In this document: positions 32,620-49,041 of the stretch, piece by piece
Layout of the letters: every line of letters starts with the position of its first letter
Position numbering within the stretch: the stretch's first letter is position 1
Virus record (IMG/VR): IMGVR_UViG_3300042261_001312
Span: 186,001 to 250,000 of that record
Strand: one strand, 5' to 3'
Length of the DNA stretch: 64,000 nt
The notes under the pieces: model-generated
What the model was told of the DNA's origin: nothing
What the model saw: only the letters and a program-made list of their open reading frames with translations
Databases searched by the model: none
Translations under genes and position numbers: made by a program

Positions 32620-35600
32620 GTGGCAAAAGTAAAAGTAGTAAATAATAATCTTGACCAGAATTTAAATGGTAATTATTTTAACAATACTGCATCCGAAACA
32701 ATATTTTCGTTTGGCAGTTTCAGAGTAACATCAAATTTTGATGGTAGAAAGTATATTGATTATACTAATACTTTGAGTTCATTTGTGCGTCCAGTAACAT
32801 TAGAAACAATAGGCATTTCAGATACTCAATCAAGCATTATTTATCAGTATGCAACAAATGCTGTTTTAAATTTAGATAAAACTGATTTAAACACATTTAT
32901 TAGATTTGGTTCGGCGTATGAATTTTTGAGAGTATCTGTTCAAAATATTATTACTTCGTACCCGGGTAGTTTGTTCGTAAACTCCCAAATATCCAGAGGT
33001 GGGAATATCACATACACTAATTATTCATATGATTGGTCAACCAATACTTCAACATTTAGAGTACCTGTAAACTGTATTGTAAATACATTTAGTTTGGTTT
33101 ATAATTATGGCAATACCAGTTTGCCAAATGACGAAGAATTAAAAAATCTTAATCTATCATACAGCAAATATGTTGTTTGGTCTTCATTATATCCCGACAA
33201 CAATACATTTAATATTGTAGGATTTACTGGAAATACAACAGGACGTAATTATTTAATGCTTAAAGTAAATGGAAATCCATTTGCCAAGGTTGCCGAAGTT
33301 AGTGGAAGTACCGCTTCTGTTCTTGATTTTCATATTAAACCAAATAGTTTTGTTTTTGAAGAATTTAGGTCATTATTGAATGAATATGAGAAATACATAA
33401 TTTCTAATAGAGAAAGTACCAATGGATTTAAATTCACACTTAAAGACCCGACATTATTAGATGACGGTAGTATAATTTATGTAGATACCACATTATTATG
33501 GACAACTAGCGATTATTATAACATTGATATTAATACACCAAGTTATCAAAGATTTTTAGAGTCTTTATTAACCATTGGTGCTAAATATGATAAAATAAAA
33601 ACCGATTTAATTGCAAGATTTTTAACACCTGCTTCAATGAAGGCATATGACCTCACAGAAGAAGGAAAAATGACTAAATTGTTGAGAATTTACGGTAGAG
33701 AATTCGATCAAATACGAGAATTTATTGATTCTCTGGTGTATATTAATACAGTAACGTATAACAAGATCAATAATATTCCAGACCAGTTAATTAAAAATAT
33801 GTCAAACACGTTTGGGTGGGACTATTTCTCATTAGTTAACGAAATGGAATTGGTTAATAGTTTCTTAACTGTTGACGAAAACGAGAGAAATCTAACAACA
33901 GATTTACTTCCTGCGGAAATTAATATTGAACTTTGGCGAAGAATATTAATGAATACTGGTTACTTTTGGAAATCAAAAGGAACTAGGGACGCAATTAAAT
34001 CAATGTTTCTTTTAATTGGCATACCCGAACCATTTATTAATATCACAGAATACGTATATACCGTTGATGGTAAAATTAATCCAAATACTGTTGAATTATC
34101 AATCAATGACTTCCCAACAAATTCATTTTCATACGACGGTGACGGATATCCCAAAGCACCATTAGAAACAAGTGAATTCTTTTTTCAAATATCTGGCGAC
34201 ACTGATAGTGGTCAAGCATATTTGGATGTATTCCGCATGGCAGGATTTAATTTAACAAGAACTGTTGATAACAAAAAATCATGGAATCTTAGCGGTGCAA
34301 CGTATAGAATTGACGATACAACCCCAATTTATTATCAAGATGATAGTAGATTGGTAATCAATACAAAAGAAGTTGATGTTTCACTCGATACTTCAAGAGG
34401 AATTGAATATGATGTATATGATTACATTAAGAAAGATTTTGCAATTAATTCAAGTGGATATACATTACCATATTCATATGTGAATATATCTTTAGGTGTA
34501 ACTGGTTCACAAAACACATTCCCACTTCCAGCAACATACACGTCAAATAAAGTTTTGGGTGATTTGGAAGTTCGTTTTAACGGAATATTATTAAATGCAC
34601 CAAAAACTGGAACAACTACTGGTATTACATATCAGGCAGACTATAGTATTAACGAAGTTACAAAAACATTTACAATATTAAATGGAAATTTCGCAGAAAA
34701 TTCAACCAGAAGAAGAGACGTAATTCAAGCAACATTCATTTATAGTGGTGGAACACATTCAATTAGTGGGGTTACGGTTGATTATGTTGTGACAAGAGTA
34801 AAAGCAAACCCAACTGGAACTGCAATTCCATTACCATCATATCCACGTGGGGATGTTCAGGTGACAATTAACGGTATTGCACTTACTAAAGGCACGCCTC
34901 AATTCATTGGTGATTATATTATCGACCCAAATAATACATCAAGTTCTAGTCAAATTATTATTCAAAATCCTGAAGTCATATCGTATTTGCAGGCAAATCC
35001 TGATATACAAGTAGCATATGTTGAAGTAGATGGTAGTGATGATATTTCTGCCAGAAGCGAAATTCATAGAATTGATAGTTTTAATAGCAGTAAATTATAT
35101 TACAATAGTCTAGCAAGTAAATATGTTTATAAACTTAATTATAAGGCAAATAACACCACTGATATTAAAATTTTAGTTGACGGTATTGCATTAGAACCTA
35201 ATAAGGATTATACAATAAATGCATTGAATCCATATGAAATATTTTTGCCAAATGGTCTTAGATATGGTATGGTTATAAGCGTATACTATCTTGTTGGTGG
35301 AAATGCGCTTTTTAATCCAGTAATTTCTGATGTGTTTGGTGTGGGTGATATCAGTCAACTATCTTTCCTTGAATTCATTGATTTGATTCAAAAACGAATG
35401 GTAAATGCTAGAAATAGAAAGACTATCAGTGATTTTAAAGGTGGCTGGTATCCTGCATTGTTAAAGATTTATGTTGAATATTTAAAAAGAGCGAATCTTC
35501 CAGATGATAATCCATTAAAATCTAATGGTTATACGTTTCATAACTTATATTCGTTTTTAAGTAAATATAATGCATTTTTCCAAAGATTTGTGGATCAATT

Positions 35601-36996
35601 ATTACCAGCAACAATTATTTTAAGAAGAGGTGGATTATTGGTTAGAAATAGTGTGTTTACTAAACAAAAATTCATGTATAGAAGAGGGGTTAACATATAT
35701 TCTGGTTCATCAACAACCACAGATATGAGAGGTAACCCAATTCTTCAATATTATGGTAGTGATGGTGCAAAATTTATGATTGCCCAAACAATACCTGCTC
35801 CACCACCACCTCCGCCAATATTATTTGTAGAAACAATGTCAGGTGTAACAATAAGTGGTTTGCCAGTTACTGGATTCTATAGTGGTGGCAAAAATATTCA
35901 GGGATATGATGTTCTTACTGAATATGGTATACTATATAGAGAATTAAATGGTGTTTGGAAAAAAGTGTCACAATATGGTTCATTGGCTGTCGATAATTAT
36001 TCTTTAGTTATTACAGGCTTAACAGTTGGTACTCAATATGAATATAGAGCATATATTAAATCAGGTATTTATGAATATTTTGGTAATAGTATGACTATAA
36101 CAATACCAGTACCATTGGCAACGCCATACATTGAAACAAAAATAGGGACAACAGGTGTGAATACGATTAATAATACTGGTGGTATGAATATAATTCGTTA
36201 TGGAGATGCAGAATATTATGGTATGCAATATAGAGAATTGGGCGCAAGTACGGCAGATATTTGCATTAGTCCAACACTATTGAATTTAAGTAATTCAAGT
36301 AGTGTTAACAATATCAGTGTCACTGGTGATACATGGAATACATATACAACATGCATAAATCCATTATATAGTTGGATAACTGCTGCTTCACCAATACCAC
36401 CGTCACCAACTGGAACAATTAATCAACTTACCGTTGCAGCAAATTCTGGTGATGCAAGAATTGGTGTTGTATGTTATGTGCCGCTTTATGGTACAACTAA
36501 ACAAGTTGTTATTAATCAAGCAACTGGATTATCACCACAAAACATTGTAGAAATGAAATGTTGTACTGGAGGATTCGCATATCAATTAAGTGGATTGAGT
36601 TGTGGTAGGGTAGATTCATTTACACCTGTGGCTTATAATGAATGTTATTCAACGACACTTTATTGGTATGCAAGTCACCCTGCAGCGGGAATCGCATTAA
36701 TGAGTTGTTTGGATGTTTATTGCAATGGCAATTCAATATACTCATGTATGTTTAGTTCTAAATTGGCTAAGACCTGCAGTGGCACATGGGGTCCAATCCT
36801 TGTTAAATACGGTGATGATATAGGTGTTAGGGTATATACTGATGCACAATCTATTACAGGAGCACCAAGTATTGCAGCGATAACAATTCAAAGCGTTACA
36901 AACGGTGTGGGTAATTTTGTTAAAGGTACTACACCAACATATATGTTGACACTAAAAGCACAAACTGATAGTACAGTAGTGCCACCAGAATTATAA
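32620..36996 (+). CDS. large baseplate wedge protein (T4 gp7/P2 gpI-like module) with C-terminal FN3-like and Cys-rich domains
   Basis: LRIYGREFD...IPDQLIKNMSNTFGW...WRRILMNTGYFWKSKGTRDAIK (gpI/gp7-type); FN3-like ITGLTVGTQYEYRAYI; polyproline hinge PAPPPPPP. Confidence 0.7.
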   Translation: MAKVKVVNNNLDQNLNGNYFNNTASETIFSFGSFRVTSNFDGRKYIDYTNTLSSFVRPVTLETIGISDTQSSIIYQYATNAVLNLDKTDLNTFIRFGSAYEFLRVSVQNIITSYPGSLFVNSQISRGGNITYTNYSYDWSTNTSTFRVPVNCIVNTFSLVYNYGNTSLPNDEELKNLNLSYSKYVVWSSLYPDNNTFNIVGFTGNTTGRNYLMLKVNGNPFAKVAEVSGSTASVLDFHIKPNSFVFEEFRSLLNEYEKYIISNRESTNGFKFTLKDPTLLDDGSIIYVDTTLLWTTSDYYNIDINTPSYQRFLESLLTIGAKYDKIKTDLIARFLTPASMKAYDLTEEGKMTKLLRIYGREFDQIREFIDSLVYINTVTYNKINNIPDQLIKNMSNTFGWDYFSLVNEMELVNSFLTVDENERNLTTDLLPAEINIELWRRILMNTGYFWKSKGTRDAIKSMFLLIGIPEPFINITEYVYTVDGKINPNTVELSINDFPTNSFSYDGDGYPKAPLETSEFFFQISGDTDSGQAYLDVFRMAGFNLTRTVDNKKSWNLSGATYRIDDTTPIYYQDDSRLVINTKEVDVSLDTSRGIEYDVYDYIKKDFAINSSGYTLPYSYVNISLGVTGSQNTFPLPATYTSNKVLGDLEVRFNGILLNAPKTGTTTGITYQADYSINEVTKTFTILNGNFAENSTRRRDVIQATFIYSGGTHSISGVTVDYVVTRVKANPTGTAIPLPSYPRGDVQVTINGIALTKGTPQFIGDYIIDPNNTSSSSQIIIQNPEVISYLQANPDIQVAYVEVDGSDDISARSEIHRIDSFNSSKLYYNSLASKYVYKLNYKANNTTDIKILVDGIALEPNKDYTINALNPYEIFLPNGLRYGMVISVYYLVGGNALFNPVISDVFGVGDISQLSFLEFIDLIQKRMVNARNRKTISDFKGGWYPALLKIYVEYLKRANLPDDNPLKSNGYTFHNLYSFLSKYNAFFQRFVDQLLPATIILRRGGLLVRNSVFTKQKFMYRRGVNIYSGSSTTTDMRGNPILQYYGSDGAKFMIAQTIPAPPPPPPILFVETMSGVTISGLPVTGFYSGGKNIQGYDVLTEYGILYRELNGVWKKVSQYGSLAVDNYSLVITGLTVGTQYEYRAYIKSGIYEYFGNSMTITIPVPLATPYIETKIGTTGVNTINNTGGMNIIRYGDAEYYGMQYRELGASTADICISPTLLNLSNSSSVNNISVTGDTWNTYTTCINPLYSWITAASPIPPSPTGTINQLTVAANSGDARIGVVCYVPLYGTTKQVVINQATGLSPQNIVEMKCCTGGFAYQLSGLSCGRVDSFTPVAYNECYSTTLYWYASHPAAGIALMSCLDVYCNGNSIYSCMFSSKLAKTCSGTWGPILVKYGDDIGVRVYTDAQSITGAPSIAAITIQSVTNGVGNFVKGTTPTYMLTLKAQTDSTVVPPEL

Positions 36997-37593: not shown

Positions 37594-40167
37594 GTGGCAT
37601 TTATCGATAAAAGAGACCCAGTTGTTTTAAATGTGATGTTAACATCAAAGGGTAGAGAATTACTATCCACTGGTGATTTAACATTTAAGTATTTTGCTAT
37701 TGGTGATAGCGAAATTGATTATGGATTAACAAATGAAATCAATGCTGTTGAAAGTCATTTAAATTATAAACCATATCCATTTGATTTTAGTATAGCAAGA
37801 CCTGTTGATAAAAATCCCAAAATAATTTCATTCATACCCAGAAGTGTGTCTGCTACTACAACTGGTACATTATCTGGTGATCCATATAATTTAATAACTG
37901 CTGTACCAACAGTTCCATTTGAAATCGTTAATAAATCATCATCAATTGGTTTTTTCACGAATACTGGCACAACATTTATTACTGACACCAATCATGTTAA
38001 ACAACCTGATGTGATGATCGATGCATCTACAATAGTGGGTGGTAGAGACTTAGCATTAAGAAAATCACCAACATATGGAACAAATTTTAATGAACCATCA
38101 GTGGGTGATTTATTGTTGATAAAATGGAATATCTATACAAACACAACTGGAAATACAATAAATAAATATTCTCCATCACCATACTTATTTTATCAGATTG
38201 TGGCTAAAACAGGTATGTTAAGTAGCGATAATTTAACTATTACGGTTGATAGAAATTTACCGAATTTCTACGGATTTAATCCAACTGCAAATATAGGTGC
38301 AATTGTTTATTATAATTACATTAATTATAGCGGCGCAACAGTATTTTTAGACACACCTGCAGATTATATATCTAAAAGTGAATTATCTTTTATAAACAAT
38401 TCCGAATGTCCAACTATCATTTTCCCGTATTGGAATATGACAATCATTTATACTGAGGAAATTAGTGGTGTTCAGACTGGAGATAGAAAATACACGCAAT
38501 TTAACAACAAGTCTTTCGGTGGTTTTGTTTCGTACATTCAAAATCAAGCACCAATCAATAAAAAATTGGGTATAATTCATTATACGAATAATTCACCAGC
38601 AAATGTTTATGGCGAAGAATTCTATTTGAAAACTCCCAAGTTGGAAATTCCAACAATAATGTGGCACAAATCTACTGGTGCAACAATGGGTTTAACTTTA
38701 GTTCCGACAGGTGATAGTAAATTATTAACTGGTGAGACCAAATCGTTAAATACCACATATTATGATCTTGCAGATTTGAGTGGAAATATTGTTGGAAAAG
38801 TATTAACTGATTTAAAGATGTTTTTGATTGAAGATCAAGAATTATTGTTTGCTATGTCCTATAAATCAAATAGGTCATGGACTCTTCCTGATTTTCTTGT
38901 TGATAATGTTGGTGCTCCAGTAATTGCACCGCCAACTCCTGAACCACCAATACCAAATACGTCAACAACAACAAGTACGACAAGTACTACATCGACTAGT
39001 ACGACTACAACAAGTACGACAAGTACGTCTACATCAACAACCACAGTGCAACCAAATGCGAAAATATTCATTAATAATGATACCACTTCTGGTGTAATTG
39101 TAACTGGAGTAACGGTTAATAATATTGCAACAACTAACGTATATCCTGTATATCCTGCACATACTGCATTGGCTATATCATATAAATTGGGTACTTGTAT
39201 TATTAAAGTAGGAATTGTTGTTGTAGTAAGCGGTGGAACTATTGATTTCACTGACTCAAACAACATATTGACATCTAAATTAATTACGACTAGTGGTGTT
39301 TACCAGTTTACGGGAATGACATTAACTAATGGTACTACTTTGAATATGTCGTTATACACTGGTGTTGTACCTACTACCACATCAACAACTACGACTACAA
39401 GTACATCTACTACAACTACTAGTACATCTACAACTACGTCAACAAGTACTTCGACTACGTCAACAAGTACAACTAGTACAACTACTTTACCGCCTGCTCC
39501 TACGGTAGATACTCTCACATCAACAGGTTCAACATATACAACTGCAAATGTTAGAGGTGATGTTTTAAGTGCAGGAAGTTTAACTGTTATTGCAAGAGGT
39601 GTTGTTTACATTACTGCTACAGAATATGATAATGGCAACGGTATACCACCAGAAGCAGGAACAAGAGTATATGATGTTACAGGTGGAACTGGTACATTTA
39701 GTTTCTACGTATCAGGCTTAATGAGTGGTACTGAATATGTGTATAAGTCATTTGCAATCAATGAATTAAATAATATTGGATATTCAGATAATACTGAAAC
39801 ATTTACCACATTAGCAGCAACAACAACGACTACATTGCCAGTTGGAACTACAAATTTTAATGCGGGTGTTAGTAACGAAGTGACAGCACCATATACGATT
39901 ACGAGTGTTAAAGCAAATTCAGTAGAATTACTTACACATCCAGTGACGGCAGGTAATGGTGACGTTCATCCAATAATGCCTCAGACAAATGCAACAGTAG
40001 TTGTGAGTTTTACTGGCACATTAACTAGTCCATATACCCAGATAGTTTTGTGGAGAGATAGTGGCACTATAATAAGAAGTATAAATCCAACTGTATTGGC
40101 TGCTGGCTCATATACTTTCTATAATATAACGTATAATAATTTCTTGTGGATTACCTTAGTTCCTTAA
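37594..40167 (+). CDS. tail/baseplate protein, paralogue A: conserved N-terminal ~430 aa, two T/S tracts, FN3/Ig-like distal domains
   Basis: N-terminus nearly collinear with 40198 (LNVMLTSKGRELLSTG...GDSEIDY ... AMSYKSNRSWTLPD); FN3-like SGLMSGTEYVYKSFAIN. Confidence 0.7.
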   Translation: MAFIDKRDPVVLNVMLTSKGRELLSTGDLTFKYFAIGDSEIDYGLTNEINAVESHLNYKPYPFDFSIARPVDKNPKIISFIPRSVSATTTGTLSGDPYNLITAVPTVPFEIVNKSSSIGFFTNTGTTFITDTNHVKQPDVMIDASTIVGGRDLALRKSPTYGTNFNEPSVGDLLLIKWNIYTNTTGNTINKYSPSPYLFYQIVAKTGMLSSDNLTITVDRNLPNFYGFNPTANIGAIVYYNYINYSGATVFLDTPADYISKSELSFINNSECPTIIFPYWNMTIIYTEEISGVQTGDRKYTQFNNKSFGGFVSYIQNQAPINKKLGIIHYTNNSPANVYGEEFYLKTPKLEIPTIMWHKSTGATMGLTLVPTGDSKLLTGETKSLNTTYYDLADLSGNIVGKVLTDLKMFLIEDQELLFAMSYKSNRSWTLPDFLVDNVGAPVIAPPTPEPPIPNTSTTTSTTSTTSTSTTTTSTTSTSTSTTTVQPNAKIFINNDTTSGVIVTGVTVNNIATTNVYPVYPAHTALAISYKLGTCIIKVGIVVVVSGGTIDFTDSNNILTSKLITTSGVYQFTGMTLTNGTTLNMSLYTGVVPTTTSTTTTTSTSTTTTSTSTTTSTSTSTTSTSTTSTTTLPPAPTVDTLTSTGSTYTTANVRGDVLSAGSLTVIARGVVYITATEYDNGNGIPPEAGTRVYDVTGGTGTFSFYVSGLMSGTEYVYKSFAINELNNIGYSDNTETFTTLAATTTTTLPVGTTNFNAGVSNEVTAPYTITSVKANSVELLTHPVTAGNGDVHPIMPQTNATVVVSFTGTLTSPYTQIVLWRDSGTIIRSINPTVLAAGSYTFYNITYNNFLWITLVP
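38959..39045 (+). repeat. Thr/Ser coding tract 4
   Basis: 29 consecutive Thr/Ser codons preceded by a Pro-rich segment. Confidence 0.9.
39373..39486 (+). repeat. Thr/Ser coding tract 5
   Basis: 38 consecutive Thr/Ser codons. Confidence 0.9.
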
Positions 40168-40197: not shown

Positions 40198-42027
40198 ATG
40201 GCATTTATTGATATAAAAGACCCGCTAGTTTTAAATGTAATGTTAACATCGAAAGGTAGAGAATTATTATCTACTGGAAATTTAACATTCAAATATTTCG
40301 CTGTGGGTGATAGTGAAATTGATTATGGTTTTATTAAGGAAGTAAATATCGATGATGCCGAATATTCTGCATATGATTCAACAATTTTACAACCAACGGA
40401 TAAAAATCCAAGGATAATTTCTTTTATACCAAGTTTGCCGTCTGGTGATACATATAACACAATATCAGGACTTACAGCCACATCATATAATGTTACACAT
40501 CAAGTAGAACCAATTGGATTTTTTTCAAGCGGAGCAACTCAATTTATTGTGGATGCAGACCATGTTAAACAACCTGATGCAATGGTTTATGTAAATGGTG
40601 TAACTGGCGGTACTACATTGAGATTGAGAAAAGCACCAACATATGGAACAAGCGGTCAAGAACCAGCAATTGGTGATTTAGTTTTGGTTAAATGGGTGCA
40701 TTATGGACATACAACAGGGTATACTGTAAATAAAAATGTGCCAAGTCCATATTTAACCTATCAAATTATAGGCAAAAGCGGTATGTTGGCAAATGATGAC
40801 CTTACAGTCATTGTGGATAGAAGTCTACCAAATTTTAAAGGATTTAATTATTATAATGGTATTGCTGGTGCAATGATTTATTACAACTTCTCTAACTATA
40901 CTGGAAGCACAATATATAATGATTTAGAAACTGATTATATTAGTGAAAGCGTGTTGTCATTCACTCAAAATAATCAATGCCCAATTCCAGCATTTCCTTT
41001 TTGGAATATGTCAATTGTATATACCAGTGAAATTGCTGGTGTTATGTCTTTTCATAGAAAATATACTCAGTTTGATAGTAGAACGTATGGTGGTTTTGTT
41101 ACATATATACAAAATCAAATGCCAGTGTATGATAAATTAGGTATTATACACTATAGTAATGAATCACCAGCAAACACATATGGTGATGCGTTTAATTTAA
41201 AAACAGCCAGATTGGAAATTCCAACAATAATGTGGCATAAATCTATCACAAGAACATTGGGTGTTACATTAGTACCAACTGGTAGTACTAAGACCTTGGC
41301 AGGACTTGAAACTCAATATTATGATCTTGCAGATTTAAATGGAAATATTGTTGGAAAAGTGTTTATTGATTTGAAAATGTTTTTGATTGAAGATCAGGAA
41401 TTATTGTCAGCAATGTCATATAAATCAAATAGATCATGGACACTTCCAGATTATTATGTTGATGAAAAAATACCTACAACAACCACAACTAGTACAAGTA
41501 CTTCTACAACAACCACAACTAGTACAAGTACTACAAGTACAACCACAACTAGTACAAGTACAACTAGTACGAGCACAACTAGTACGAGCACAACAAGTAC
41601 CTCAACATCAACAACTAGTACAAGTACAACTAGTACAAGTACAACTAGTACGAGCACAACAAGTACTTCAACTACTAGTACGAGCACAACAAGTACTTCA
41701 ACTACTACAACTACATGTGCATTAACATTTAATGCTCCTTCATCTGAAGATGGTAACTTGATAGTTACAAATTCTTCTTCAAGTTTATATCATAACATAT
41801 TTGATTACATCAATATTATATTCACACCAGAGAATGCAATGCAATCATCAGGATATGATGTTTGGTATCAAGTATTCAGAATTAGAAGTGGAATAGGTTC
41901 AATCGTTTTGCAAGATAAGATTACAAATTGTGAAAATGGTGTACAAGCAAATGTATCTCCACAAATTCCTAATACGATTTGCGATGATGAATATTTTGTT
42001 TATTTATACTTAATTGAGCCAGTTTAA
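40198..42027 (+). CDS. tail/baseplate protein, paralogue B: conserved N-terminal domain, 80-aa T/S tract, short distal domain
   Basis: Shares the N-terminal domain with 37594; the two diverge completely after SWTLPD. Confidence 0.7.
   Translation: MAFIDIKDPLVLNVMLTSKGRELLSTGNLTFKYFAVGDSEIDYGFIKEVNIDDAEYSAYDSTILQPTDKNPRIISFIPSLPSGDTYNTISGLTATSYNVTHQVEPIGFFSSGATQFIVDADHVKQPDAMVYVNGVTGGTTLRLRKAPTYGTSGQEPAIGDLVLVKWVHYGHTTGYTVNKNVPSPYLTYQIIGKSGMLANDDLTVIVDRSLPNFKGFNYYNGIAGAMIYYNFSNYTGSTIYNDLETDYISESVLSFTQNNQCPIPAFPFWNMSIVYTSEIAGVMSFHRKYTQFDSRTYGGFVTYIQNQMPVYDKLGIIHYSNESPANTYGDAFNLKTARLEIPTIMWHKSITRTLGVTLVPTGSTKTLAGLETQYYDLADLNGNIVGKVFIDLKMFLIEDQELLSAMSYKSNRSWTLPDYYVDEKIPTTTTTSTSTSTTTTTSTSTTSTTTTSTSTTSTSTTSTSTTSTSTSTTSTSTTSTSTTSTSTTSTSTTSTSTTSTSTTTTTCALTFNAPSSEDGNLIVTNSSSSLYHNIFDYINIIFTPENAMQSSGYDVWYQVFRIRSGIGSIVLQDKITNCENGVQANVSPQIPNTICDDEYFVYLYLIEPV
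41476..41715 (+). repeat. Thr/Ser coding tract 6
   Basis: 80 consecutive Thr/Ser codons, built largely of TTSTS units. Confidence 0.95.
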
Positions 42028-42148: not shown

Positions 42149-43171
42149 ATGAAGCAATTAAGATTTGTTAGCGCACAACCTGCAACGAAATATTATGCAT
42201 GGCAGGTAGAAGTGATGATAAATAATTTTATCGAGATGGGTATTAATGCAAATCACATTGATGTAATTGCATGGAAAGAAAATGGCATAATACCTGAAGA
42301 ATGGAGTAAACTTGCCAATAGATACGCAGCAAGATTCTTTTTTTATGATGACACGAGAGATACCAAATATTATGTGTCATCAATCCGACCAAACATATTA
42401 AAACAACATTTTAAAGCACATTCATATTTAAAATATGATGTGATATTTTATCATGATTGCGACATTATATTCACAAAAAATCCAAGAGAATGGATTACCG
42501 ATGAAATGCTAAGTGACGACATTTGGTATGGTTCTGACACTCGCTGGTACATTTCACACTCATACATTAAAAGCAAAGGCGATGATGTGATGAAAAAAAT
42601 GTGTGACATCATGCAGATTGATGAACAAATTGTTGAAGAAAATGAATTAAACTGTATTGGTGCTCAATATCTTATGAAAAATATCGATTATTCGTTTTGG
42701 GATATGGTTGAGAAAGACAGCGAGAAACTGTTTAAGGATGTCACGAATTTAAACACACAAAAGATCATGCTGGATAAAATGAGATTCGAAGAAGAAAAAA
42801 AAGAATGGGAAAAAAATAATCCAGAAGCACTTGCCAAAGGTGAAAAATATTCAAGACCTCTTTATCACGAACTCCAAATTTGGTGTGCAGATATGTGGGC
42901 AGTTCTTTGGGGTGCATGGAGATTAGGATATAAAACAAATTGCCATCCAAATTACGAATTTAGTTGGGCGACATCAAATGAAGAAGAATATCAAAGAATG
43001 AATATCATGCATAATGCTGGGGTTGCATCAGCAAATGAGGGATTGTTTTATAAGGCATCGTATATGAATGAATATCCCTACAATAAAAATTTAACAATAA
43101 GAGAAGGCACTTCCAGTAAAAAATACTACGAGTGGGTTCAAAAAACAGAAAAAATAACAGCATTACAATAA
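42149..43171 (+). CDS. GT-A glycosyltransferase resembling plant peptidyl-serine alpha-galactosyltransferase / hydroxyproline O-arabinosyltransferase (GT96/GT95)
   Basis: Ordered motifs YYAWQ, YVSSIRP, FYHDCDII (DxD), IGAQYLMK, IWCADMWAVLWGAWRLG parallel the remembered SERGT1/HPAT pattern YxxWQ, YxxxNKP, ILDADMI, GG..xM, WxxEMYxYxFGAA.xG. Confidence 0.65.
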   Translation: MKQLRFVSAQPATKYYAWQVEVMINNFIEMGINANHIDVIAWKENGIIPEEWSKLANRYAARFFFYDDTRDTKYYVSSIRPNILKQHFKAHSYLKYDVIFYHDCDIIFTKNPREWITDEMLSDDIWYGSDTRWYISHSYIKSKGDDVMKKMCDIMQIDEQIVEENELNCIGAQYLMKNIDYSFWDMVEKDSEKLFKDVTNLNTQKIMLDKMRFEEEKKEWEKNNPEALAKGEKYSRPLYHELQIWCADMWAVLWGAWRLGYKTNCHPNYEFSWATSNEEEYQRMNIMHNAGVASANEGLFYKASYMNEYPYNKNLTIREGTSSKKYYEWVQKTEKITALQ

Positions 43172-43824
43172 TGGAAAAAATAATACATCAAATATGGGTC
43201 GGTCCTTATGAAATTCCAGAAAGGGAACAATATTTTATCGAAACAGTAAAAAAATATAATCCGACATTTCAACATATGCTATGGAAAGATGATAATTTGC
43301 CAGAATTACCTGAAAAAATTCAAATATTATGTGATGCATTTAAAAAACAAAAAGATTATGCACATATTGCAGATGTCTTGAGAATTTTTTTGGTTAAACA
43401 ATATGGTGGTTTGTATATTGATGTTGATTTTAAGCCGATCAAACCTTTTGATTTGTTTGACAATAATAATAATTCATTATTTGTCTGTTATCATGGTGGT
43501 AATGACTATACAATGCCAAACGGAGTTTTTGGTGGTAAAAAAGATTCGGAACAAGTTAATTTCATTTATGACTTGGTTGATATTAAACTTGGTGGATGGT
43601 ACGGACCGAGTTGGCTCGGTGGCGCAGTCAAAAAATATTTAAATTTAGACTACGAAACTGATCATGAAGTGGTGAAAGAAAAATGTGTTGAGAATAATAT
43701 CGAATATTGCTTATTTCCATTATTTGAACAATATTTTCAACATTTAGCATTATATTCATGGTCGCCAGAAAATAAGAGAAATTTTGAAACAGGTAATATT
43801 AATTATTTAGAATGGACGAAATAG
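43171..43824 (+). CDS. GT32-family (OCH1/A4GALT-like, DxD) glycosyltransferase
   Basis: KIIHQIWVG, AHIADVLRI, YGGLYIDVDF, GP.WL. Start set to ATG 43171 (TAATG overlap). Confidence 0.88.
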   Translation: MEKIIHQIWVGPYEIPEREQYFIETVKKYNPTFQHMLWKDDNLPELPEKIQILCDAFKKQKDYAHIADVLRIFLVKQYGGLYIDVDFKPIKPFDLFDNNNNSLFVCYHGGNDYTMPNGVFGGKKDSEQVNFIYDLVDIKLGGWYGPSWLGGAVKKYLNLDYETDHEVVKEKCVENNIEYCLFPLFEQYFQHLALYSWSPENKRNFETGNINYLEWTK

Positions 43825-44438
43825 AAAAAATATTTTCAGGAGATAATCATCTATATGGTAGAACAGATATAGATACTTTTAGTGTAAGTGGCTGTGGGTC
43901 ACAAATGGATAACTCAACATTAAATGTCAGGGAAAATTTATATAATTTCTTAATTAAATATAATATTAAAAGCATTTTCGATGCACCATGTGGCGATTAT
44001 TGGTGGATGAGACATGTTGATTTAAAGGAAATTGAATATATTGGCGGTGATATAATTACCGAACAAATGAAGAAATTGAATAAGAATTTCCCTGATAAAA
44101 AATTCATAAGATTTGATGTTATTAAAGACAAATTCCCAGATGTTGATTTATTGTTTTGTCGTGATTGTCTATTTCATTTTAGCAAAAAGGATAAAATAAT
44201 GACATTTGAAAATTTTATTAATTCAAACATAAAATATTTGTTAATGAGTAATCATCCATTGAGTACAAATAATTTAGACATTTCCACTGGTGATTTTACA
44301 CACATTAACTGGCAATTATCTCCGTGGAATTTCGGTGAACCAGTTGACATCTTATATGATAGTAATAGTGGATATGATACCAAAGAATTACAATTATATA
44401 CTAAAGAACAAATTTTAAAATATTTAAAAAATGGGTAA
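43812..44438 (+). CDS. class I SAM-dependent methyltransferase (possible glycan O-methyltransferase)
   Basis: SGCGS N-terminal motif, motif I SIFDAPCGD, YIGGDII, FDVI, DLLFCRDCLFHF. Confidence 0.8.
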   Translation: MDEIEKIFSGDNHLYGRTDIDTFSVSGCGSQMDNSTLNVRENLYNFLIKYNIKSIFDAPCGDYWWMRHVDLKEIEYIGGDIITEQMKKLNKNFPDKKFIRFDVIKDKFPDVDLLFCRDCLFHFSKKDKIMTFENFINSNIKYLLMSNHPLSTNNLDISTGDFTHINWQLSPWNFGEPVDILYDSNSGYDTKELQLYTKEQILKYLKNG

Positions 44439-45225
44439 GAAAGTAAGTTTTGTCTGTACGACATATGGAAGATTTTATTGTGTTAGGCGCATTGTTGCAC
44501 AATATCATGCACAAACATATCAAAATAAAGAATTAATTATTTTCAATCAAGATATGGAACATCCTTTTGAATTAGGTTTTGAAGATGATTCAATCATTGT
44601 CATCAATAATGATACAAATTACATAACAGGAATGTTATATACAAATAGAGGTGATATTTGTAGAGATGCTGTAACACATGCAACTGGTGATTATTTCATG
44701 TTGGCTGATGATGATGATATTTATTTACCTTGGCATTTACAACAGGCTGTTGAAGGTATTGAGGAAATGGGTACAGATGCATGGAAACCTGAAAAAAGTT
44801 TATTCGCTGTTGCTGATAGAGTTGAACTTTGCCAAAATACTATGGAAGCAAGTGTCATTATTAAAATGGATAGAATCAGAGAAATTGGATTTAGAAATGA
44901 TTTAACTGGTTACGAGGGATTGAGTTGGTATACCAAATTAAGAGACGAAAAACAGTTATTGGAAAATAATAAAAATTATATTCCGTCATATTGTTTTAAT
45001 TGGAGTGATCCTTCTGAAATTGCTGGGCATAAACAAAGTGGTGACATTGACAACCCAAATAATTTTGAAAATCATAGAAGAGCCAGTTGTGATTATGCAA
45101 CAGAACCATTAACGCCAATTACCGCAGATGAATTGGTAAGCGTATATGAAAAGTATTTTAATTGGTTGAGAAATAACCAAGATAAAATTAATAAAGATTA
45201 CTATGTGAGGTATTTTGATAATTAA
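44431..45225 (+). CDS. GT2-family glycosyltransferase
   Basis: VSFVCTTYGR...QTYQNKELIIFN...ATGDYFMLADDDDIYLPWHL. Confidence 0.88.
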   Translation: MGKKVSFVCTTYGRFYCVRRIVAQYHAQTYQNKELIIFNQDMEHPFELGFEDDSIIVINNDTNYITGMLYTNRGDICRDAVTHATGDYFMLADDDDIYLPWHLQQAVEGIEEMGTDAWKPEKSLFAVADRVELCQNTMEASVIIKMDRIREIGFRNDLTGYEGLSWYTKLRDEKQLLENNKNYIPSYCFNWSDPSEIAGHKQSGDIDNPNNFENHRRASCDYATEPLTPITADELVSVYEKYFNWLRNNQDKINKDYYVRYFDN

Positions 45226-45260: not shown

Positions 45261-46013
45261 ATGGCAGACGGATATTCAATATTTACGACATACATTTTAG
45301 TACCAACAGGAACGACATCAGGTTTAGGTTATAATTATAGTGAAGCAATTCATTGCAACTATATTAAAAAAACGCAATCAACAATTGCCAATCAAAGTAT
45401 GGGTCAAATTACTATTAATTTCCCCAATATCAGTGATTTTAAATTTCTGAGTGATGACCCTGTTAATAATACTGGATATACGGCAAATAAAATATATGCA
45501 TTGGTACAAATTATAAGTAATAGTGGCTATACAAGCATTGATGAAGTAAAAGCAATTTCTACTGAATGGAGAATGGTTGATATTACAAATCAAATTCCCA
45601 CACATACCGATGGAAATGCATTAACCGCAGCAGAATTGACAAGTGTGGTATTTAAAGTTCCATTCAATAATTATTATAGTTATCCAATATATAATTTAAA
45701 TTATCTCAATTATCCAACAAAAGAAGTTGGAGATGATGATAAATTGTCTTTTGGTGACGAAATTTATTTTTTTGGTAATGTTTCCACTGAAATAAAAGCA
45801 ATTGCATATACAACAGACCTTTCAATTAATTTACCTTTAAATCAATTCAATTCATCTACGAATAGCACTTGGACACAAGATGATAGCGTAGCAATTAGTG
45901 AAATTGGAATTTATGATGCCAATAAGAATTTGGTTGCTATTGGTAAATTAAATAACCCAATTTTAAAAGACGAAACAATCGCCAGAACTATAGTTTTCAA
46001 CATTGATTTCTAA
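45261..46013 (+). CDS. tail/baseplate structural protein
   Basis: C-terminal ISEIGIYDANKNLVAIGKLNNPILK resembles the EIGL(F/Y)D..G.L(I/V)A module of tail-fibre attachment/collar proteins. Confidence 0.6.
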   Translation: MADGYSIFTTYILVPTGTTSGLGYNYSEAIHCNYIKKTQSTIANQSMGQITINFPNISDFKFLSDDPVNNTGYTANKIYALVQIISNSGYTSIDEVKAISTEWRMVDITNQIPTHTDGNALTAAELTSVVFKVPFNNYYSYPIYNLNYLNYPTKEVGDDDKLSFGDEIYFFGNVSTEIKAIAYTTDLSINLPLNQFNSSTNSTWTQDDSVAISEIGIYDANKNLVAIGKLNNPILKDETIARTIVFNIDF

Positions 46014-46060: not shown

Positions 46061-46068
46061 GTATTTAT
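46061..46068 (+). promoter_or_regulatory. GTATTTAT putative late promoter
   Basis: 41 nt before ATG 46102. Confidence 0.6.
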
Positions 46069-46101
46069 TATAAATTATTAGAATATTAGTTTATAATAAA
46101 C

Positions 46102-46299: not shown

Positions 46300-46300
46300 T

Positions 46301-46912
46301 ATGGAAAAATACATATGGTCTTTGGATATAAGCACCACAAATATTGGTAGTGCATTGTGGGATTCTAAAGGAAAATTGATTGAATTAAAACACCTTGAAT
46401 TGAAAACTGATAAGAATGTGCCAGTTGAGGATAGAGATATTCATAAGGCAGAAATCTTCAGAAAATATGTTCATGAATATAAGGAACGAATCTTGAATGA
46501 ACTAAATGGTGAAATTATTCATATTGTTGTTGAAGAACCTCTTGGTGGAAGCAACAATGCGAATACTGTTTCACTATTGTATGGATTTAATGGCATTTGT
46601 AGATATATTTTGTATATGGCATTCGACAAATACCCAATGAAAATTTCCGTACATGATTCACGAAAGTTATTCTGTCATGAATTGGTAAAAGTGAGTTTTA
46701 ATAAGAAAGGTGAAAAATCTGAAGTATTATCGTTCCCAAAAGAATATATTAAGGATAAAAAGTTGTATATCTGGAAAAAAGTTTGTAAATTAGAACCCCA
46801 AATTGAGTGGTTTTACAAGAAAGACGGTCAACCAAAAGATATGAATTACGATATGAGCGATTCATATTGTGTCGGCTATGCTGGACTGAAGACACTGGGG
46901 ATAATAAAATGA
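46301..46912 (+). CDS. ruvC: RuvC-like Holliday-junction resolvase
   Basis: IWSLDISTTNIG (D1), IVVEEP (E), DMSDSYC (DxxD). Start set to ATG 46301. Confidence 0.75.
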   Translation: MEKYIWSLDISTTNIGSALWDSKGKLIELKHLELKTDKNVPVEDRDIHKAEIFRKYVHEYKERILNELNGEIIHIVVEEPLGGSNNANTVSLLYGFNGICRYILYMAFDKYPMKISVHDSRKLFCHELVKVSFNKKGEKSEVLSFPKEYIKDKKLYIWKKVCKLEPQIEWFYKKDGQPKDMNYDMSDSYCVGYAGLKTLGIIK

Positions 46913-47217
46913 AATACATATACTTAATTAAGTCAGTAGAGGACAGTTATTACAAAATTGGAATATCTAAACATCCAAACAAACGTTTATCACAATTACA
47001 AACGGGAAATTCAGCACATTTAAAATTAATTGGTACGTATCAATCTGAATATGCCAATCAGATTGAAGGAACATTGCAAAGACGATATTCACATTTACAT
47101 AAAGAGGGTGAATGGTTTGACATGCCTATTGACATCGAACTTTCATTTCTGAATGAATGTAAGAAAATAGAAGAAACATTAAGTTCATTAAAAAGAAGCG
47201 GTAATATTTTCATTTGA
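46909..47217 (+). CDS. T5orf172/MUG113-type GIY-YIG nuclease domain protein
   Basis: YIYLIK...YKIGISKHPNKRLSQLQTGN...E..L...GEWF; ATGA overlap at 46909. Confidence 0.85.
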   Translation: MKYIYLIKSVEDSYYKIGISKHPNKRLSQLQTGNSAHLKLIGTYQSEYANQIEGTLQRRYSHLHKEGEWFDMPIDIELSFLNECKKIEETLSSLKRSGNIFI

Positions 47218-47240
47218 ACTTGGTTTAATTGTTTTTTTTT

Positions 47241-47248
47241 GTATTTAT
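47241..47248 (+). promoter_or_regulatory. GTATTTAT putative late promoter
   Basis: 43 nt before ATG 47284. Confidence 0.6.
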
Positions 47249-47283
47249 TTTAAAAATAATATACAAATTAAAACATTAAAACT

Positions 47284-49041
47284 ATGTTTGAATATAAGGG
47301 AATTTATAATAGTAGTAATACTGAATCACGTAATTATGCACGTACTGGCATGAAAATTCCAGATTCACCGACCGTGAACGAAAAATTTACCGAAATCGCA
47401 ACATCAATCAATCAATTATCCTCCTTGACTGGCTCTAGTGGTGGTGCAATTAATGTAACCTATGCTGAATTGGTAAGTTTAATCAATATTTCTGGACTAA
47501 CCATTAATCAAACTTATAAACTAACAGATTATCGAACAGTTCATTATATGTTTGATTATAATGTAAGGTTAAATGAAATTAATACTGGCGAATTAGAACC
47601 ATTGTTGTTAACAGCAATATCTACAAATAGTTTATCCCAAATTGCTAAATCTACTTTATATCCACAAGATATAATTAATTATGATTGGAAATCGGATTAT
47701 TGGATTCAAGATATAGCATTTGCTACTGCTGAAAATATCAGTGGAACTACTATGAGTCCAGATTTAACTAATGTTACGTTAATACCTAATTATAAGGGTG
47801 TTATATATCGCAGAGAAGATACTAAAAATAATGTAATATTGGGTTATGATTTCAGACATGTTAAGTTTAGAAGATGGAAATTTAACTATCCAATATGGGA
47901 TTCTGGAACTACATATAATTTAGACGAAAGGGTTCAAGTGCCATCTGATGGAGTGTATTTTTCTTCAGTAAGTGGAAATACTGATAATTTGGTTACTGAT
48001 ACCACAAAATGGTCGAAAATTATTGATTATAATTTAACAGAATATTGGTGTTGTAATTCGTCAGATGCTTTAGATGTTAATGATTTTATTGATGCATATA
48101 CTTTTCACGGATTTGATCAGTGGAATACCTATGATATTAGTGTAAAAGATGTTATAATTAATTCACTTAATGATACATATACGCAATTTTGGGGATATAT
48201 TGGATCAAGTTTAAGTAATTCAGTTTTTTATTTGGGAACTAATAATGATACATATCAAAGTTATACAACATTTGATATAAATATTGCCCCTTTTTTTGAA
48301 TTAAATACTATTGGAGATGATTTTAATAGCAATAACATTGGAATTTTATCCAATACCAACATCATAGGAAATGCTTTCATTCTAAACAAAATAGGAAATT
48401 ATTTTCAAAGCAATATCATAGGAAATACTTTTGGAATGAACATCGCAGGAAATGATTTTCAAGGCAATATCATAGAATATCAATCTGTTTACAATATTAT
48501 TGGAAATTCTTTTCAATCCAACACAATAGGAATTGGTTTTCAAAAAAACAACATAGGAGATGATTTTAAAAACAATAATTTGGAATATAATTTTTTTCAA
48601 AATACCATAGGAAATAGTTTTACTCAAAATAAAATAAAAAATAATTTCTATAACAACACCATAGAAACTTATTTCTTTAGTAATACCATAGGATATAGAT
48701 TTAATAAAAATAGCATAGGAAATAGTTTCAATCAAAACACAGTTGGAAATGATTTTAAAAATAATACTATAGGGCATGGCTTACAATTCAATACTATTGG
48801 AAATGATTTTAAAATCAATACAGTTTTTAGTAAAATATACAACTTAACAATACCAACTGGCGTAACATTTCAATACAATACAATAAGAGATGGTATAGAT
48901 TTCACTGGTATTGATTTCAGTTCCTCAACACATGTTTACTCTACATATAACTGTGATTTATTTACAACGCCAAATGGAACAATAAAATTAAGTTATTGTG
49001 ATAATTCTGGAGTAATTCAGGTAGTAAATGCTAATGCTTAA
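47284..49041 (+). CDS. putative tail fibre/spike protein with (N-x-I-G-N-x-F) beta-solenoid repeats
   Basis: Many imperfect ~11-aa repeats N[TI]IG[NY]xFxxN in the C-terminal third; N-terminal YKLTDYRTVH module. Confidence 0.65.
   Translation: MFEYKGIYNSSNTESRNYARTGMKIPDSPTVNEKFTEIATSINQLSSLTGSSGGAINVTYAELVSLINISGLTINQTYKLTDYRTVHYMFDYNVRLNEINTGELEPLLLTAISTNSLSQIAKSTLYPQDIINYDWKSDYWIQDIAFATAENISGTTMSPDLTNVTLIPNYKGVIYRREDTKNNVILGYDFRHVKFRRWKFNYPIWDSGTTYNLDERVQVPSDGVYFSSVSGNTDNLVTDTTKWSKIIDYNLTEYWCCNSSDALDVNDFIDAYTFHGFDQWNTYDISVKDVIINSLNDTYTQFWGYIGSSLSNSVFYLGTNNDTYQSYTTFDINIAPFFELNTIGDDFNSNNIGILSNTNIIGNAFILNKIGNYFQSNIIGNTFGMNIAGNDFQGNIIEYQSVYNIIGNSFQSNTIGIGFQKNNIGDDFKNNNLEYNFFQNTIGNSFTQNKIKNNFYNNTIETYFFSNTIGYRFNKNSIGNSFNQNTVGNDFKNNTIGHGLQFNTIGNDFKINTVFSKIYNLTIPTGVTFQYNTIRDGIDFTGIDFSSSTHVYSTYNCDLFTTPNGTIKLSYCDNSGVIQVVNANA

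What the first reader, a model, noticed from the sequence alone, without database searches (positions are those of the whole stretch)
32620..49041. [S/T]-G-x-T tetrapeptide strongly enriched in structural proteins: possible modification sequon
Hand counts of [ST]GxT outside the pure T/S tracts: 12 in the 1458-aa wedge protein (12 of 31 [ST]G dipeptides), 10 in 37594, 7 in 40198 (7 of 12), 3 in 45261 (3 of 4), 5 in 47284 (5 of 11) and 3 in 31185. Controls: 1 of 13 in the DNA polymerase and 0 of 7 in the Mre11-Rad50 fusion. The middle residue varies freely (A, Y, G, V, T, N, S, D, L, M, E, I), which argues against simple repeat descent. Inference: a dispersed recognition motif, for example for the phage glycosyltransferases, or a selected beta-turn.
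Basis: partly seen in the sequence, partly recalled or inferred. Interest (0 to 1): 0.62.

Follow-up and report, generated by a model that had tools for sequence, protein, structure and literature searches.

The report
Enriched S/T-G-x-T motif in tail proteins
The tail, baseplate and fibre proteins of this uncultivated 328-kb T4-like jumbo phage and its relatives carry the short motif Ser/Thr-Gly-x-Thr about four times more often than chance, a real feature of this clade that is either an unusually favoured strand-connecting loop or a recognition site for a phage enzyme such as a glycosyltransferase.

Summary
The enrichment survives every control I could run.

- **Size of the effect:** the six window proteins hold 40 sites against about 7 expected (z 12-13, also with 10-40-aa block shuffles). 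Same-composition permuted patterns give 6-16.
- **Unbiased rank:** among all 8000 'ab.c' patterns, SG.T and TG.T rank 3rd and 5th in this genome, and TG.T 1st and SG.T 3rd in a 349-kb relative.
- **Level:** it acts on protein, since the DNA words occur only in the sense frame. Repeat descent does not explain it (40 sites fall into 37 independent clusters).
- **Specificity:** [ND]G.T, [ST]A.T, [ST]G.S and [ST]G.[VI] are not enriched.
- **Distribution:** sheath insertion domains, wedge, fibres and decoration-like proteins carry it. The gp23-like capsid protein and non-virion proteins do not.
- **Outgroups:** T4, S-RIM2, Mel-JY01 and PA5oct virion proteins show only 0.2-2x.

The mechanism is unresolved because both AlphaFold models failed. 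Sites follow hydrophobic strand-like segments in indel-prone loops, with Gly nearly invariant, so I favour a selected structural connector (0.4). A modification sequon stays open (0.3): a GT2 is conserved across the clade. The glycosyltransferase cassette inside the window tracks the T/S tracts of one sub-clade, not the motif.

The parts
31185..31631 (+). 148-aa baseplate-module protein with 3 motif sites: aa 29 TGGT, 63 SGET, 67 SGTT (nt 31269, 31371, 31383)
   Evidence: Counts. Orthologues in 22 loci carry 1-12 sites each. In the long forms the motif links short hydrophobic strand-like segments.
32620..36996 (+). 1458-aa large baseplate ('wedge') protein with 12 sites at aa 203, 228, 525, 558, 612, 663, 667, 709, 716, 1074, 1132 and 1235. 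It has an FN3-like domain at aa 1093-1161.
   Evidence: 12 observed against 1.7+-1.3 in shuffles. In 22 homologues the eight sites at 203-716 except 667 are kept in 12-21 sequences. Another conserved column, ref 1154, is not a motif in the window. FN3 match; site 1132 TGLT sits in the FN3 'tGLxPgTxY' turn. The name 'wedge' is not verified: there are no Pfam, PHROG, PDB or T4 hits.
37594..40167 (+). 857-aa fibre-like protein, paralogue of 40198, with 10 sites. T/S tracts at aa 454-486 and 592-633.
   Evidence: (54% identity to 40198 over the shared N-domain).
40198..42027 (+). 609-aa fibre-like protein. All 7 sites lie in the conserved N-terminal 420 aa. A T/S tract at aa 425-508 precedes a variable C-terminus.
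   Evidence: Family of 21: the N-domain holds 97 sites against 10.3 expected, and the C-terminal parts hold 13 against 20.6. Only columns 173 and 235 are conserved in at least 15 of 21 sequences; the other sites turn over.
43132..45225 (+). Variable glycosyltransferase / methyltransferase / glycosyltransferase cassette: 43132 PF04488 DXD glycosyltransferase, 43812 methyltransferase-like, 44431 GT2. It lies between the fibre genes and 45261.
   Evidence: Pfam. No homologue in any of the 31 related loci. L003 has a GT6 and an FkbM methyltransferase at the same place. The cassette is found only in the sub-clade with T/S tracts. It is listed as context and is not shown to act on the motif.
45261..46013 (+). 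250-aa structural protein with 3 sites at aa 16, 71 and 88
   Evidence: 3 of 4 [ST]G. Orthologues in 24 loci carry 1-6 sites against 0.2-0.4 expected.
47284..49041 (+). 585-aa structural protein with 5 sites at aa 70, 153, 207, 230 and 525
   Evidence: 5 observed against 0.78+-0.88 in shuffles. No family or PDB match.
27112..31163 (+). Two T/S-tract proteins (860 and 489 aa) that are NOT enriched in the motif: 3 observed against 2.9 expected, and 0 against 5.2. Tracts at nt 27277-27612, 29901-30218 and 30429-30680.
   Evidence: Tracts are absent from 27 of 31 related loci and from the whole G001 genome.

Best explanation
[ST]-G-x-T is a short motif under selection at the protein level. It sits where a buried hydrophobic beta-strand ends and a surface loop begins, in the outward-facing parts of the tail: sheath insertion domains, large baseplate protein, fibres and decoration-like proteins.

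My leading reading is structural. The Gly allows the chain reversal, and the two hydroxyl residues cap and stiffen the connector. This phage lineage has reused the solution again and again in unrelated domains.

**Shown:** the enrichment, its order- and residue-specificity, its restriction to peripheral virion proteins, its presence across the clade, its loop-like location, and the conservation of Gly.

**Inferred:** that the selected property is local structure rather than recognition by another molecule.
For: **Reality and selection**
- z 12-18 against shuffles and permuted patterns.
- Top ranks among 8000 patterns in two genomes whose orthologues are only 56% identical at the median.
- The DNA words occur only in sense frame 0, 43 times against 0-2 in other frames. 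The T-ending codon bias at position 1 is shared by non-motif [ST]G.

**Structural context**
- Positions -5 to -1 are hydrophobic (0.41-0.51 against a baseline of 0.35). Positions +4 to +9 alternate (0.37, 0.30, 0.41, 0.29, 0.38, 0.34), like an amphipathic strand.
- In the 31185 family the motif joins successive short hydrophobic segments, for example KYVI-SGTT-AQIYV-TGGT-...-TGNT-IVYFLGG.
- Sites lie close to indel columns.
- At conserved wedge sites Gly is kept in 18-21 of 21 sequences (15-21 sequences aligned per site). The x residue is conserved at some of those sites (612, 716, 525, 558). Position 1 tolerates Ala and position 4 tolerates Ser.
- One site is the known FN3 E-F turn.
- In the only stretches of the models with pLDDT above 55, wedge site 203 is strand-GN-strand and fibre site 136 directly precedes a strand.

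**A general baseline exists**
- The coupling P(T|[ST]G.)/P(T|xG.) is about 1.25-1.6 in this phage's non-virion proteins, in T4 and in S-RIM2.
- TG.T ranks 2nd in S-RIM2 virion proteins (39 observed, 18.1 expected), where no PF00535 GT2 domain was found.
Against: **No usable 3-D model.** pLDDT was 46.5 and 44.2.

**A generic turn or cap does not predict the strict chemistry**:
- [ND]G.T 0.95x, although Asx residues normally mimic Ser/Thr in such turns
- [ST]G.[VI] 0.82x
- [ST]G.S 1.10x
- [ST]A.T 1.03x

**It does not predict the amplification in this clade.** Coupling is 3.5 and 3.95 here, against 1.36 in T4, 1.64 in S-RIM2, 0.29 in Mel-JY01 and 0.35 in PA5oct.

**No fixed hairpin register.** Hydrophobicity at -1 and +4 is not positively coupled (OR 0.63).

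**Sites turn over fast between orthologues.** There are 1-9 per fibre N-domain, 1-12 in the 31185 family, and 7 against 5 with about one clearly shared position in the sheath. They are therefore not needed for the fold.
Confidence: 0.4

Rival explanations
1. The motif is a sequon. A phage-encoded enzyme, most plausibly the clade-conserved GT2 (genome 119296-120105, minus strand), recognises exposed [ST]-G-x-T loops on folded tail proteins in the cytoplasm. It O-glycosylates one of the hydroxyls, giving the tail a glycan coat. Sites are gained and lost under selection for number and exposure rather than for position.
For: - Hydroxyls are strictly required at both ends, and Asx, Val/Ile and Ser substitutes are not enriched.
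- There is a three-way dependence: T follows [ST]G. in 35-45% of cases but follows xG. in only 10-11%.
- The amplification is seen in this clade and not in four outgroup phages. Those four returned no match to this GT2, although the tool notes that an empty answer proves nothing without a positive control.
- The GT2 is a core gene: 68-72% identity in 4 of 5 large relatives, 66-79% across the best 80 of 139 IMG/VR matches, against a median orthologue identity of 56%.
- Enrichment is confined to outward-facing virion parts, and sites turn over between orthologues.
- Further glycosyltransferase and methyltransferase genes sit inside the tail-fibre module.
- Phage virion O-glycosylation by glycosyltransferases encoded next to structural genes has a precedent in mycobacteriophages, as summarised in PMC12619734.
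Against: - There is no direct evidence of any modification.
- The correlation with the GT2 is confounded by phylogeny: any clade-specific gene would show it.
- The exposed gp23-like major capsid protein is not enriched (1 of 6).
- S-RIM2 shows a weaker version of the enrichment, and no PF00535 GT2 domain was found there.
- Mel-JY01 has two GT2 genes and no enrichment.
- The cassette in the window follows the T/S tracts instead.
- No such sequon was found in the searched literature.
- Phage non-virion proteins do not avoid the motif (coupling 1.25).
Confidence: 0.3
2. The loops are ligand-binding 'nests'. A strand followed by [ST]-G-x-T resembles the phosphate-binding loop of flavodoxins (T/S-x-T-G-x-T after strand 1; recalled from memory, not tested). 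The many exposed copies would give the tail weak multivalent affinity for anionic or glycan polymers of the host envelope.
For: - The motif follows a hydrophobic strand.
- At wedge site 525 the low-confidence model places a helix directly after it.
- Hydroxyls and Gly are strictly required.
- It is restricted to outward-facing tail parts.
Against: - This rests on analogy only.
- No helix follows most sites.
- There is no clustering of sites that would build a binding surface: 14 gaps of 10 residues or fewer, against 16.3 expected.
- No structural model is available.
Confidence: 0.08
3. Hidden common descent. Most sites descend from an ancient domain or repeat that carried the motif and has diverged beyond recognition, so the enrichment is inherited rather than selected.
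For: - Some sites are parts of repeats: LGGTL-TGNT-TI.G, and the 17-residue ..ALYSN-TGGT-NNIAIGYQ.. units of the fibres at 162-178 kb. One cluster holds 25 sites.
- 37594 and 40198 share three sites.
Against: - 145 of 187 sites remain independent after all-against-all alignment, and 37 of the window's 40.
- The flanks carry almost no information.
- Sites arise at non-homologous positions in orthologues.
Confidence: 0.07
4. Composition or nucleotide-level artefact. T-, S- and G-rich loops, codon bias or a DNA word would produce the pattern without selection on the peptide.
For: These proteins are rich in T, S, G and N. Codons ending in T are preferred before GGN.
Against: - Block shuffles down to 10 aa keep z at about 12.
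- Permuted patterns of identical composition are 2.5-6 times rarer.
- The DNA words are absent from the other five frames.
- The codon bias is the same at non-motif [ST]G.
Confidence: 0.01

Closest known systems
Small hydrogen-bonded loop motifs (ST-turn, ST-motif, Gly-containing beta-turns), as catalogued in 'Motivated Proteins' (PMC2651126, seen)
   Same: A Ser/Thr is followed by Gly at a chain reversal after a beta-strand. A weak general preference for [ST]G.T (coupling 1.25-1.6) is seen in every larger control set.
   Different: Asx does not substitute for Ser/Thr here, and Thr is required at +3. No fixed hairpin register is detectable. The frequency is 3-4 times the general baseline and is specific to one phage clade's virion proteins.
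Fibronectin type III E-F turn ('tGLxPgTxY')
   Same: Wedge site 1132 (TGLT...GTQYEY) lies in an FN3-like domain matched to FN3con structures, E 9e-5.
   Different: It explains one of 40 sites. Thr at +3 is not part of the FN3 consensus and is kept in only 6 of 21 homologues.
Mycobacteriophage virion O-glycosylation (Freeman et al. 2023, cited through PMC12619734)
   Same: Phage glycosyltransferase genes lie within or beside the structural genes.
   Different: There the glycans sit at the C-termini of capsid and tail-tube subunits. Here the capsid protein is not enriched, the sites are internal loops of tail proteins, and no modification has been shown.
Autotransporter heptosyltransferases (TibC/AAH family), which recognise a strand - short acceptor loop - strand element (from my own knowledge, not checked here)
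   Same: If the sequon reading is right, this is the nearest mechanism: a cytoplasmic glycosyltransferase modifying Ser in short loops between beta-strands of a folded, beta-rich surface protein.
   Different: The enzyme family is different (here GT2 and PF04488 candidates). The substrates there are homologous repeats. No [ST]GxT rule is known for them.
Known prokaryotic and viral sequons: Bacteroidota D-[ST]-[AILVMT], N-x-[ST], and chlorovirus [AG]-N-T-x-T (the last from memory)
   Same: They are short linear motifs containing hydroxyl residues.
   Different: None is enriched in these proteins: 0.76x, 0.99x, and 5 observed against 3.4 expected.

Membership tests
Two-residue (2:2) beta-hairpin with type I'/II' turn | Gly at a turn position with a polar or small partner | tested here: inconclusive
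   Gly is obligatory ([ST]A.T 1.03x, [ST]N.T 0.87x). The x residue is N, G, A, T, S or D in about 70% of sites and hydrophobic in 26%.
Two-residue (2:2) beta-hairpin with type I'/II' turn | Flanking strands in fixed register, so that residues -1/+4 and -3/+6 face the same side | tested here: not met
   Hydrophobicity at -1 against +4 gives OR 0.63 (p 0.08), and -3 against +6 gives OR 0.73, over 276 sites of two genomes.
ST-turn / Asx-turn type capping motif | Asp/Asn can take the place of Ser/Thr at the first position | tested here: not met
   [ND]G.T is 0.95x while [ST]G.T is 3.86x.
ST-turn / Asx-turn type capping motif | Side-chain oxygen of residue i hydrogen-bonded to the main-chain NH of i+2 or i+3 | not testable with these tools
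   Both AlphaFold2 models had mean pLDDT below 47, and no PDB relative exists.
Protein glycosylation sequon | A covalent glycan on the motif's Ser/Thr | not testable with these tools
   This needs mass spectrometry of virions.
Protein glycosylation sequon | A cognate transferase that co-occurs with the motif | tested here: inconclusive
   A core GT2 is present in 4 of 5 large relatives and in 139 IMG/VR matches. Four outgroup phages that lack the amplification returned no match. The pattern is confounded with phylogeny. The glycosyltransferase cassette in the window does not co-occur with the motif.
Protein glycosylation sequon | Sites exposed on the assembled particle | tested here: inconclusive
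   Sites lie near indel columns and in sheath insertion domains (7 of 16 [ST]G, against 0 of 4 in the core, p 0.25). There is no 3-D mapping.
Bacteroidota general O-glycosylation motif D-[ST]-[AILVMT] | Asp directly before the hydroxyl residue | tested here: not met
   D[ST][AILVMT] is 0.76x. D[ST]G.T occurs 2 times against 1.7 expected. Position -1 is L, I or V.
Tandem or dispersed repeat family | Sites align with each other in significant local alignments | tested here: not met
   187 sites fall into 145 clusters, and the window's 40 into 37. Only some off-window fibre sites belong to repeats.
T4-like (gp23 / gp18 / gp25) myovirus | gp23-type capsid protein, contractile sheath and gp25-like wedge protein | tested here: met
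   PF07068 at E 6e-64. phrog_23 sheath at 1e-58. gp25 hit to T4 and S-RIM2.

The most novel reading that the evidence does not exclude
[ST]-G-x-T is the acceptor sequon of a previously unknown cytoplasmic protein O-glycosylation system of an abundant, uncultivated clade of T4-like jumbo phages. A core GT2 starts glycans on exposed loops of sheath, baseplate and fibre proteins. Selection keeps about one site per 100 residues on the tail surface, forming a glycan coat. One sub-clade has extended the system with mucin-like T/S linkers and swappable glycosyltransferase / methyltransferase cassettes.
Probability: 0.3. Interest if true: 0.85.

Novelty: new variant of a known kind. Interest (0 to 1): 0.55.

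Why it matters
Whatever its mechanism, this is one of the strongest short-peptide signals in two whole phage proteomes, and no description of it turned up in the literature searched.

If it is structural, it is a clean natural example of one loop solution being recruited repeatedly in unrelated domains. It would be a useful marker for outward-facing tail proteins in a clade where Pfam, PHROGs and PDB searches named none of the six window proteins.

If it is a sequon, it would be the first sequence-defined glycosylation motif of tailed-phage virions. It would make a glycan coat on phage tails directly testable. Sites could then be predicted from sequence in these related metagenomic genomes. 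The clade is large: one GT2 gene alone has 139 matches in IMG/VR.

Tried and rejected
**Structure and homology searches that gave nothing**
- AlphaFold2 on wedge aa 150-800 (22-sequence alignment) and on the 40198 family (21 sequences) gave pLDDT 46.5 and 44.2.
- PDB sequence and profile searches gave nothing except one FN3 domain.
- The ESM Atlas feature search on the wedge gave no usable hit.
- PHROGs and Pfam gave nothing for the six window proteins.
- BLAST against T4, S-RIM2 and Mel-JY01 structural proteins found only gp25.

**Hypotheses tested and rejected**
- Composition artefact.
- DNA-level word or codon effect.
- Clustering of sites, which is no more than random.
- Repeat descent as the main cause.
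- The known sequons.
- A fixed hairpin register.

**Leads that went nowhere**
- Link to the 'moraphage' lineage of PMC12619734: that paper reports heat-shock genes in all moraphage genomes. This genome has no HSP70, so I did not pursue it.
- Literature search for a TGXT or SGXT motif returned only OCR noise.
- The Freeman 2023 paper is not held in the library.

**Tools deliberately not used**
- Complex prediction: my leading explanation does not claim binding, and an enzyme-substrate pair would be uninformative if it failed.
- Read laying and the look-up of sequencing runs: reads cannot show a protein modification.
- No other genetic code was needed.


Full report
**Setting**

The window is bases 186001-250000 of a single 327,676-bp IMG/VR virus record with 31% G+C. 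The record encodes three T4-type markers:
- a gp23-type major capsid protein (PF07068, E 6e-64)
- a 956-aa contractile sheath (phrog_23, 1e-58)
- a gp25-like wedge protein at window 23241

It is therefore a distant T4-like jumbo myovirus. The nearest cultured relative by sheath is Microcystis phage Mel-JY01, at 35% identity.

The six proteins named in the finding have no Pfam, PHROG or INPHARED match. The PolB and the Mre11-Rad50 fusion used as controls are confirmed.

**Checking the observation**

Every hand count is exact.

- Whole-protein shuffles expect 7.4+-2.7 sites in the six proteins, which hold 40. Shuffling within blocks of 10, 20 or 40 residues removes local composition effects and leaves 6.6-7.7 (z 12-13).
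- Sixteen of the 17 other orderings or spacings of {[ST], G, T} give only 6-16. TG.[ST], which overlaps the motif, gives 25.
- To guard against post-hoc choice of pattern, I scored all 8000 'ab.c' patterns over the whole proteome against within-protein composition. SG.T (93 observed, 29.4 expected) and TG.T (96 observed, 34.5 expected) rank 3rd and 5th. Only the patterns of the pure T/S tracts and CP.C rank higher.
- I defined virion-like proteins independently of the motif as K+E below 10% and at least 140 aa. In them [ST]G.T is 3.86x over shuffles (z 18.4).
- The close variants are flat: [ST]G.S 1.10x, [ST]G.[VI] 0.82x, [ST]A.T 1.03x, [ST]N.T 0.87x, [ND]G.T 0.95x.
- The signal is a three-way dependence. 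Thr follows [ST]G. in 35% of cases but follows any other xG. in 10%, which equals composition.

**Not DNA, not repeats**

The commonest DNA words for the motif occur 43 times in the sense reading frame and 0-2 times in each other frame or strand. The preference for T-ending codons at position 1 is a general NNT-GGN codon-pair effect, and non-motif [ST]G sites share it.

All-against-all alignment of the motif-bearing proteins links 187 sites into 145 clusters, and the window's 40 into 37. Some off-window fibre sites do sit in repeats. The paralogues 37594 and 40198 share three sites. The flanks carry almost no information beyond a hydrophobic residue at -1.

**Which proteins carry it**

Outside the window the load is heavier:
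- Five fibre-like, tail-spike-like or decoration-like proteins at 161-183 kb carry 8, 24, 13, 13 and 23 sites.
- A 750-aa protein at 67 kb carries 11.
- The sheath carries 7, all in its non-conserved insertion domains.

These are not enriched:
- the gp23-like capsid protein (1 of 6)
- the 616-aa protein after gp25 (0 of 3)
- the T/S-tract proteins 27112 and 29694
- the non-virion proteome (37 of 507, coupling 1.25)

**The clade**

Homologues of 40198 were found on 31 IMG/VR contigs, at 52-71% identity.

- In all of them the large wedge-like protein carries 7-17 sites against 1.1-2.6 expected.
- Fibre and 45261 homologues are likewise enriched.
- Neighbouring non-structural ORFs carry almost none: nearly all have 0, a few have 1.
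- I read the whole 349-kb relative G001 (26% G+C, median orthologue identity 56%). TG.T and SG.T rank 1st and 3rd of 8000, with 169 sites against 47.9+-6.7.

In the wedge alignment nine columns keep the motif in 12-21 of 22 sequences. About fifty others carry it sporadically.

At the conserved sites:
- Gly is nearly invariant.
- x is conserved at some sites (612, 716, 525, 558).
- Position 1 accepts Ala.
- Position 4 accepts Ser.

Elsewhere turnover is fast:
- The 420-aa fibre N-domain carries 1 to 9 sites per orthologue. The family total is 97 against 10.3 expected.
- The 31185 family carries 1 to 12.
- The two sheaths clearly share only one aligned position.

**Outgroups**

The same statistics were run on virion proteins of four other phages.

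| Phage | Observed vs expected | Coupling ratio |
|---|---|---|
| T4 | 18 vs 12.4 (gp34: 0 of 18) | 1.36 |
| S-RIM2 | 64 vs 31.4 | 1.64 |
| Mel-JY01 | 1 vs 5.3 | 0.29 |
| PA5oct | not computed | 0.35 |
| This genome | about 4x | 3.5 |
| G001 | about 4x | 3.95 |

In S-RIM2, TG.T ranks 2nd, together with TG.V. There is therefore a weak general tendency, strongest in a cyanophage with giant beta-rich proteins. The four-fold amplification and the strict Thr at +3 belong to this clade.

**Structural context**

- Residues -5 to -1 are hydrophobic without alternation (0.41-0.51 against 0.35).
- Residues +4 to +9 alternate weakly, as in an amphipathic strand.
- In long members of the 31185 family the motif visibly joins successive short hydrophobic segments.
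- Sites lie near alignment indels, but so do all [ST]G dipeptides.
- A fixed two-residue hairpin register is not supported.
- One site is the FN3 E-F turn.
- Both AlphaFold2 runs failed and no PDB relative exists. Exposure and backbone geometry remain unknown.

**Glycosyltransferases**

The window holds a PF04488 DXD glycosyltransferase, a methyltransferase-like gene and a GT2 (43132-45225) between the fibre genes and 45261.

- None of the three has a homologue in the 31 related loci.
- The closest relatives (L002-L004) carry a GT6 and an FkbM methyltransferase at the same spot.
- The other 24 loci that reach this point go straight from the fibre gene to the 45261 homologue.
- The pure T/S tracts show the same distribution. 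They occur in the window and L001-L004 only, and nowhere in G001.

The cassette therefore goes with the mucin-like linkers, in what may be a single evolutionary event, and not with [ST]GxT.

A different gene is the only clade-wide candidate enzyme. This is a 269-aa GT2 at genome 119296-120105.
- It is 68-72% identical in four of five large relatives. The fifth record is 63% complete.
- It is 66-79% identical across the best 80 of 139 IMG/VR matches.
- The four outgroup phages returned no match.

This correlation cannot be separated from phylogeny.

**Verdict**

The mechanism is not settled.

I rank a selected structural strand-connector first (0.4). The direct evidence (sequence context, Gly invariance, a general baseline) points that way. 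That reading does not explain the hydroxyl-only chemistry, the turnover, or the amplification in this clade.

A recognition motif, most plausibly an O-glycosylation sequon, explains those features but has no direct support (0.3). Ligand-binding loops (0.08) and hidden common descent (0.07) are minor. A composition artefact is excluded.

The costly protein search was used once, on gene 42149, which the family scans had left open.

Noticed in passing
window 27277-27612, 29901-30680, 38953-39492, 41470-41721; loci L001-L004: Pure T/S tracts (mucin-like linkers, 33-112 aa) occur only in the sub-clade formed by the window and L001-L004. The same sub-clade alone carries a swappable glycosyltransferase / methyltransferase cassette after the fibre gene: PF04488 glycosyltransferase, methyltransferase and GT2 here, GT6 and FkbM methyltransferase in L003. 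The tracts are the more conventional candidates for O-glycosylation.
   Followed up: partly
window 6520, 10082, 14159, 18071, 23218, 32596, 40177, 42113, 45240, 54492, 61859 (+ strand word TATTTATA): The word TATTTATA lies 14-25 nt upstream of many + strand start codons, before both structural and non-structural genes. Both strands give 30 hits against 17.6+-4.2 expected. It may be a promoter or leader element of the clade.
   Followed up: no
window 42149-43171: A 340-aa protein with no Pfam or NCBIfam match has 2699 homologues, the best-listed ones at about 60-80% identity, in metagenomes on contigs up to 372 kb. It is missing from G001 and from most related loci at this position. It is a very widespread phage gene of unknown function.
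   Followed up: partly
genome 119296-120105 (-), outside the window: A clade-core GT2, 66-79% identical across the best 80 of 139 IMG/VR matches. It is more conserved than the median orthologue (56%) and lies in the sheath / tail region. Four outgroup T4-like phages returned no match.
   Followed up: partly
genome 168373-178230 (+), outside the window: Fibre-like proteins are built of about 17-residue units (..N.A.G..AL..NT-[ST]G.T..). They resemble trimeric-autotransporter head repeats, and many carry Cys (patterns GC.N, C.N.A and N.A.G are strongly enriched). They match phrog_4636, 6002 and 23837 but nothing in the PDB.
   Followed up: partly
window 23590-24552, 26402-27112, 46807-47217; genome 113270-113896: Homing-endonuclease-like genes are scattered through the baseplate and tail module. 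They include GIY-YIG/T5orf172, GIY-YIG plus NUMOD3, and proteins with DUF4379 zinc-finger and DUF559/DUF2726 matches.
   Followed up: no
window 35896-36102 (wedge aa 1093-1161) and 27670-27933 (27112 aa 187-274): An FN3-like domain sits in the C-terminal part of the 1458-aa protein (E 9e-5 to FN3con). A cadherin-like domain sits in the 860-aa T/S-tract protein, just below Pfam's cut-off.
   Followed up: no
whole genome: CP.C is the fourth most enriched ab.c pattern here (19 observed, 0.8 expected) and the second in G001 (21 observed, 1.1 expected). This points to many small CPxC (thioredoxin-like or zinc-ribbon) proteins.
   Followed up: no
window 14989-16578: A CCA-adding / poly(A) polymerase family enzyme has a C-terminal stretch resembling the cyclic phosphodiesterase domain of fungal tRNA ligase. 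No tRNA gene was found in the window.
   Followed up: no
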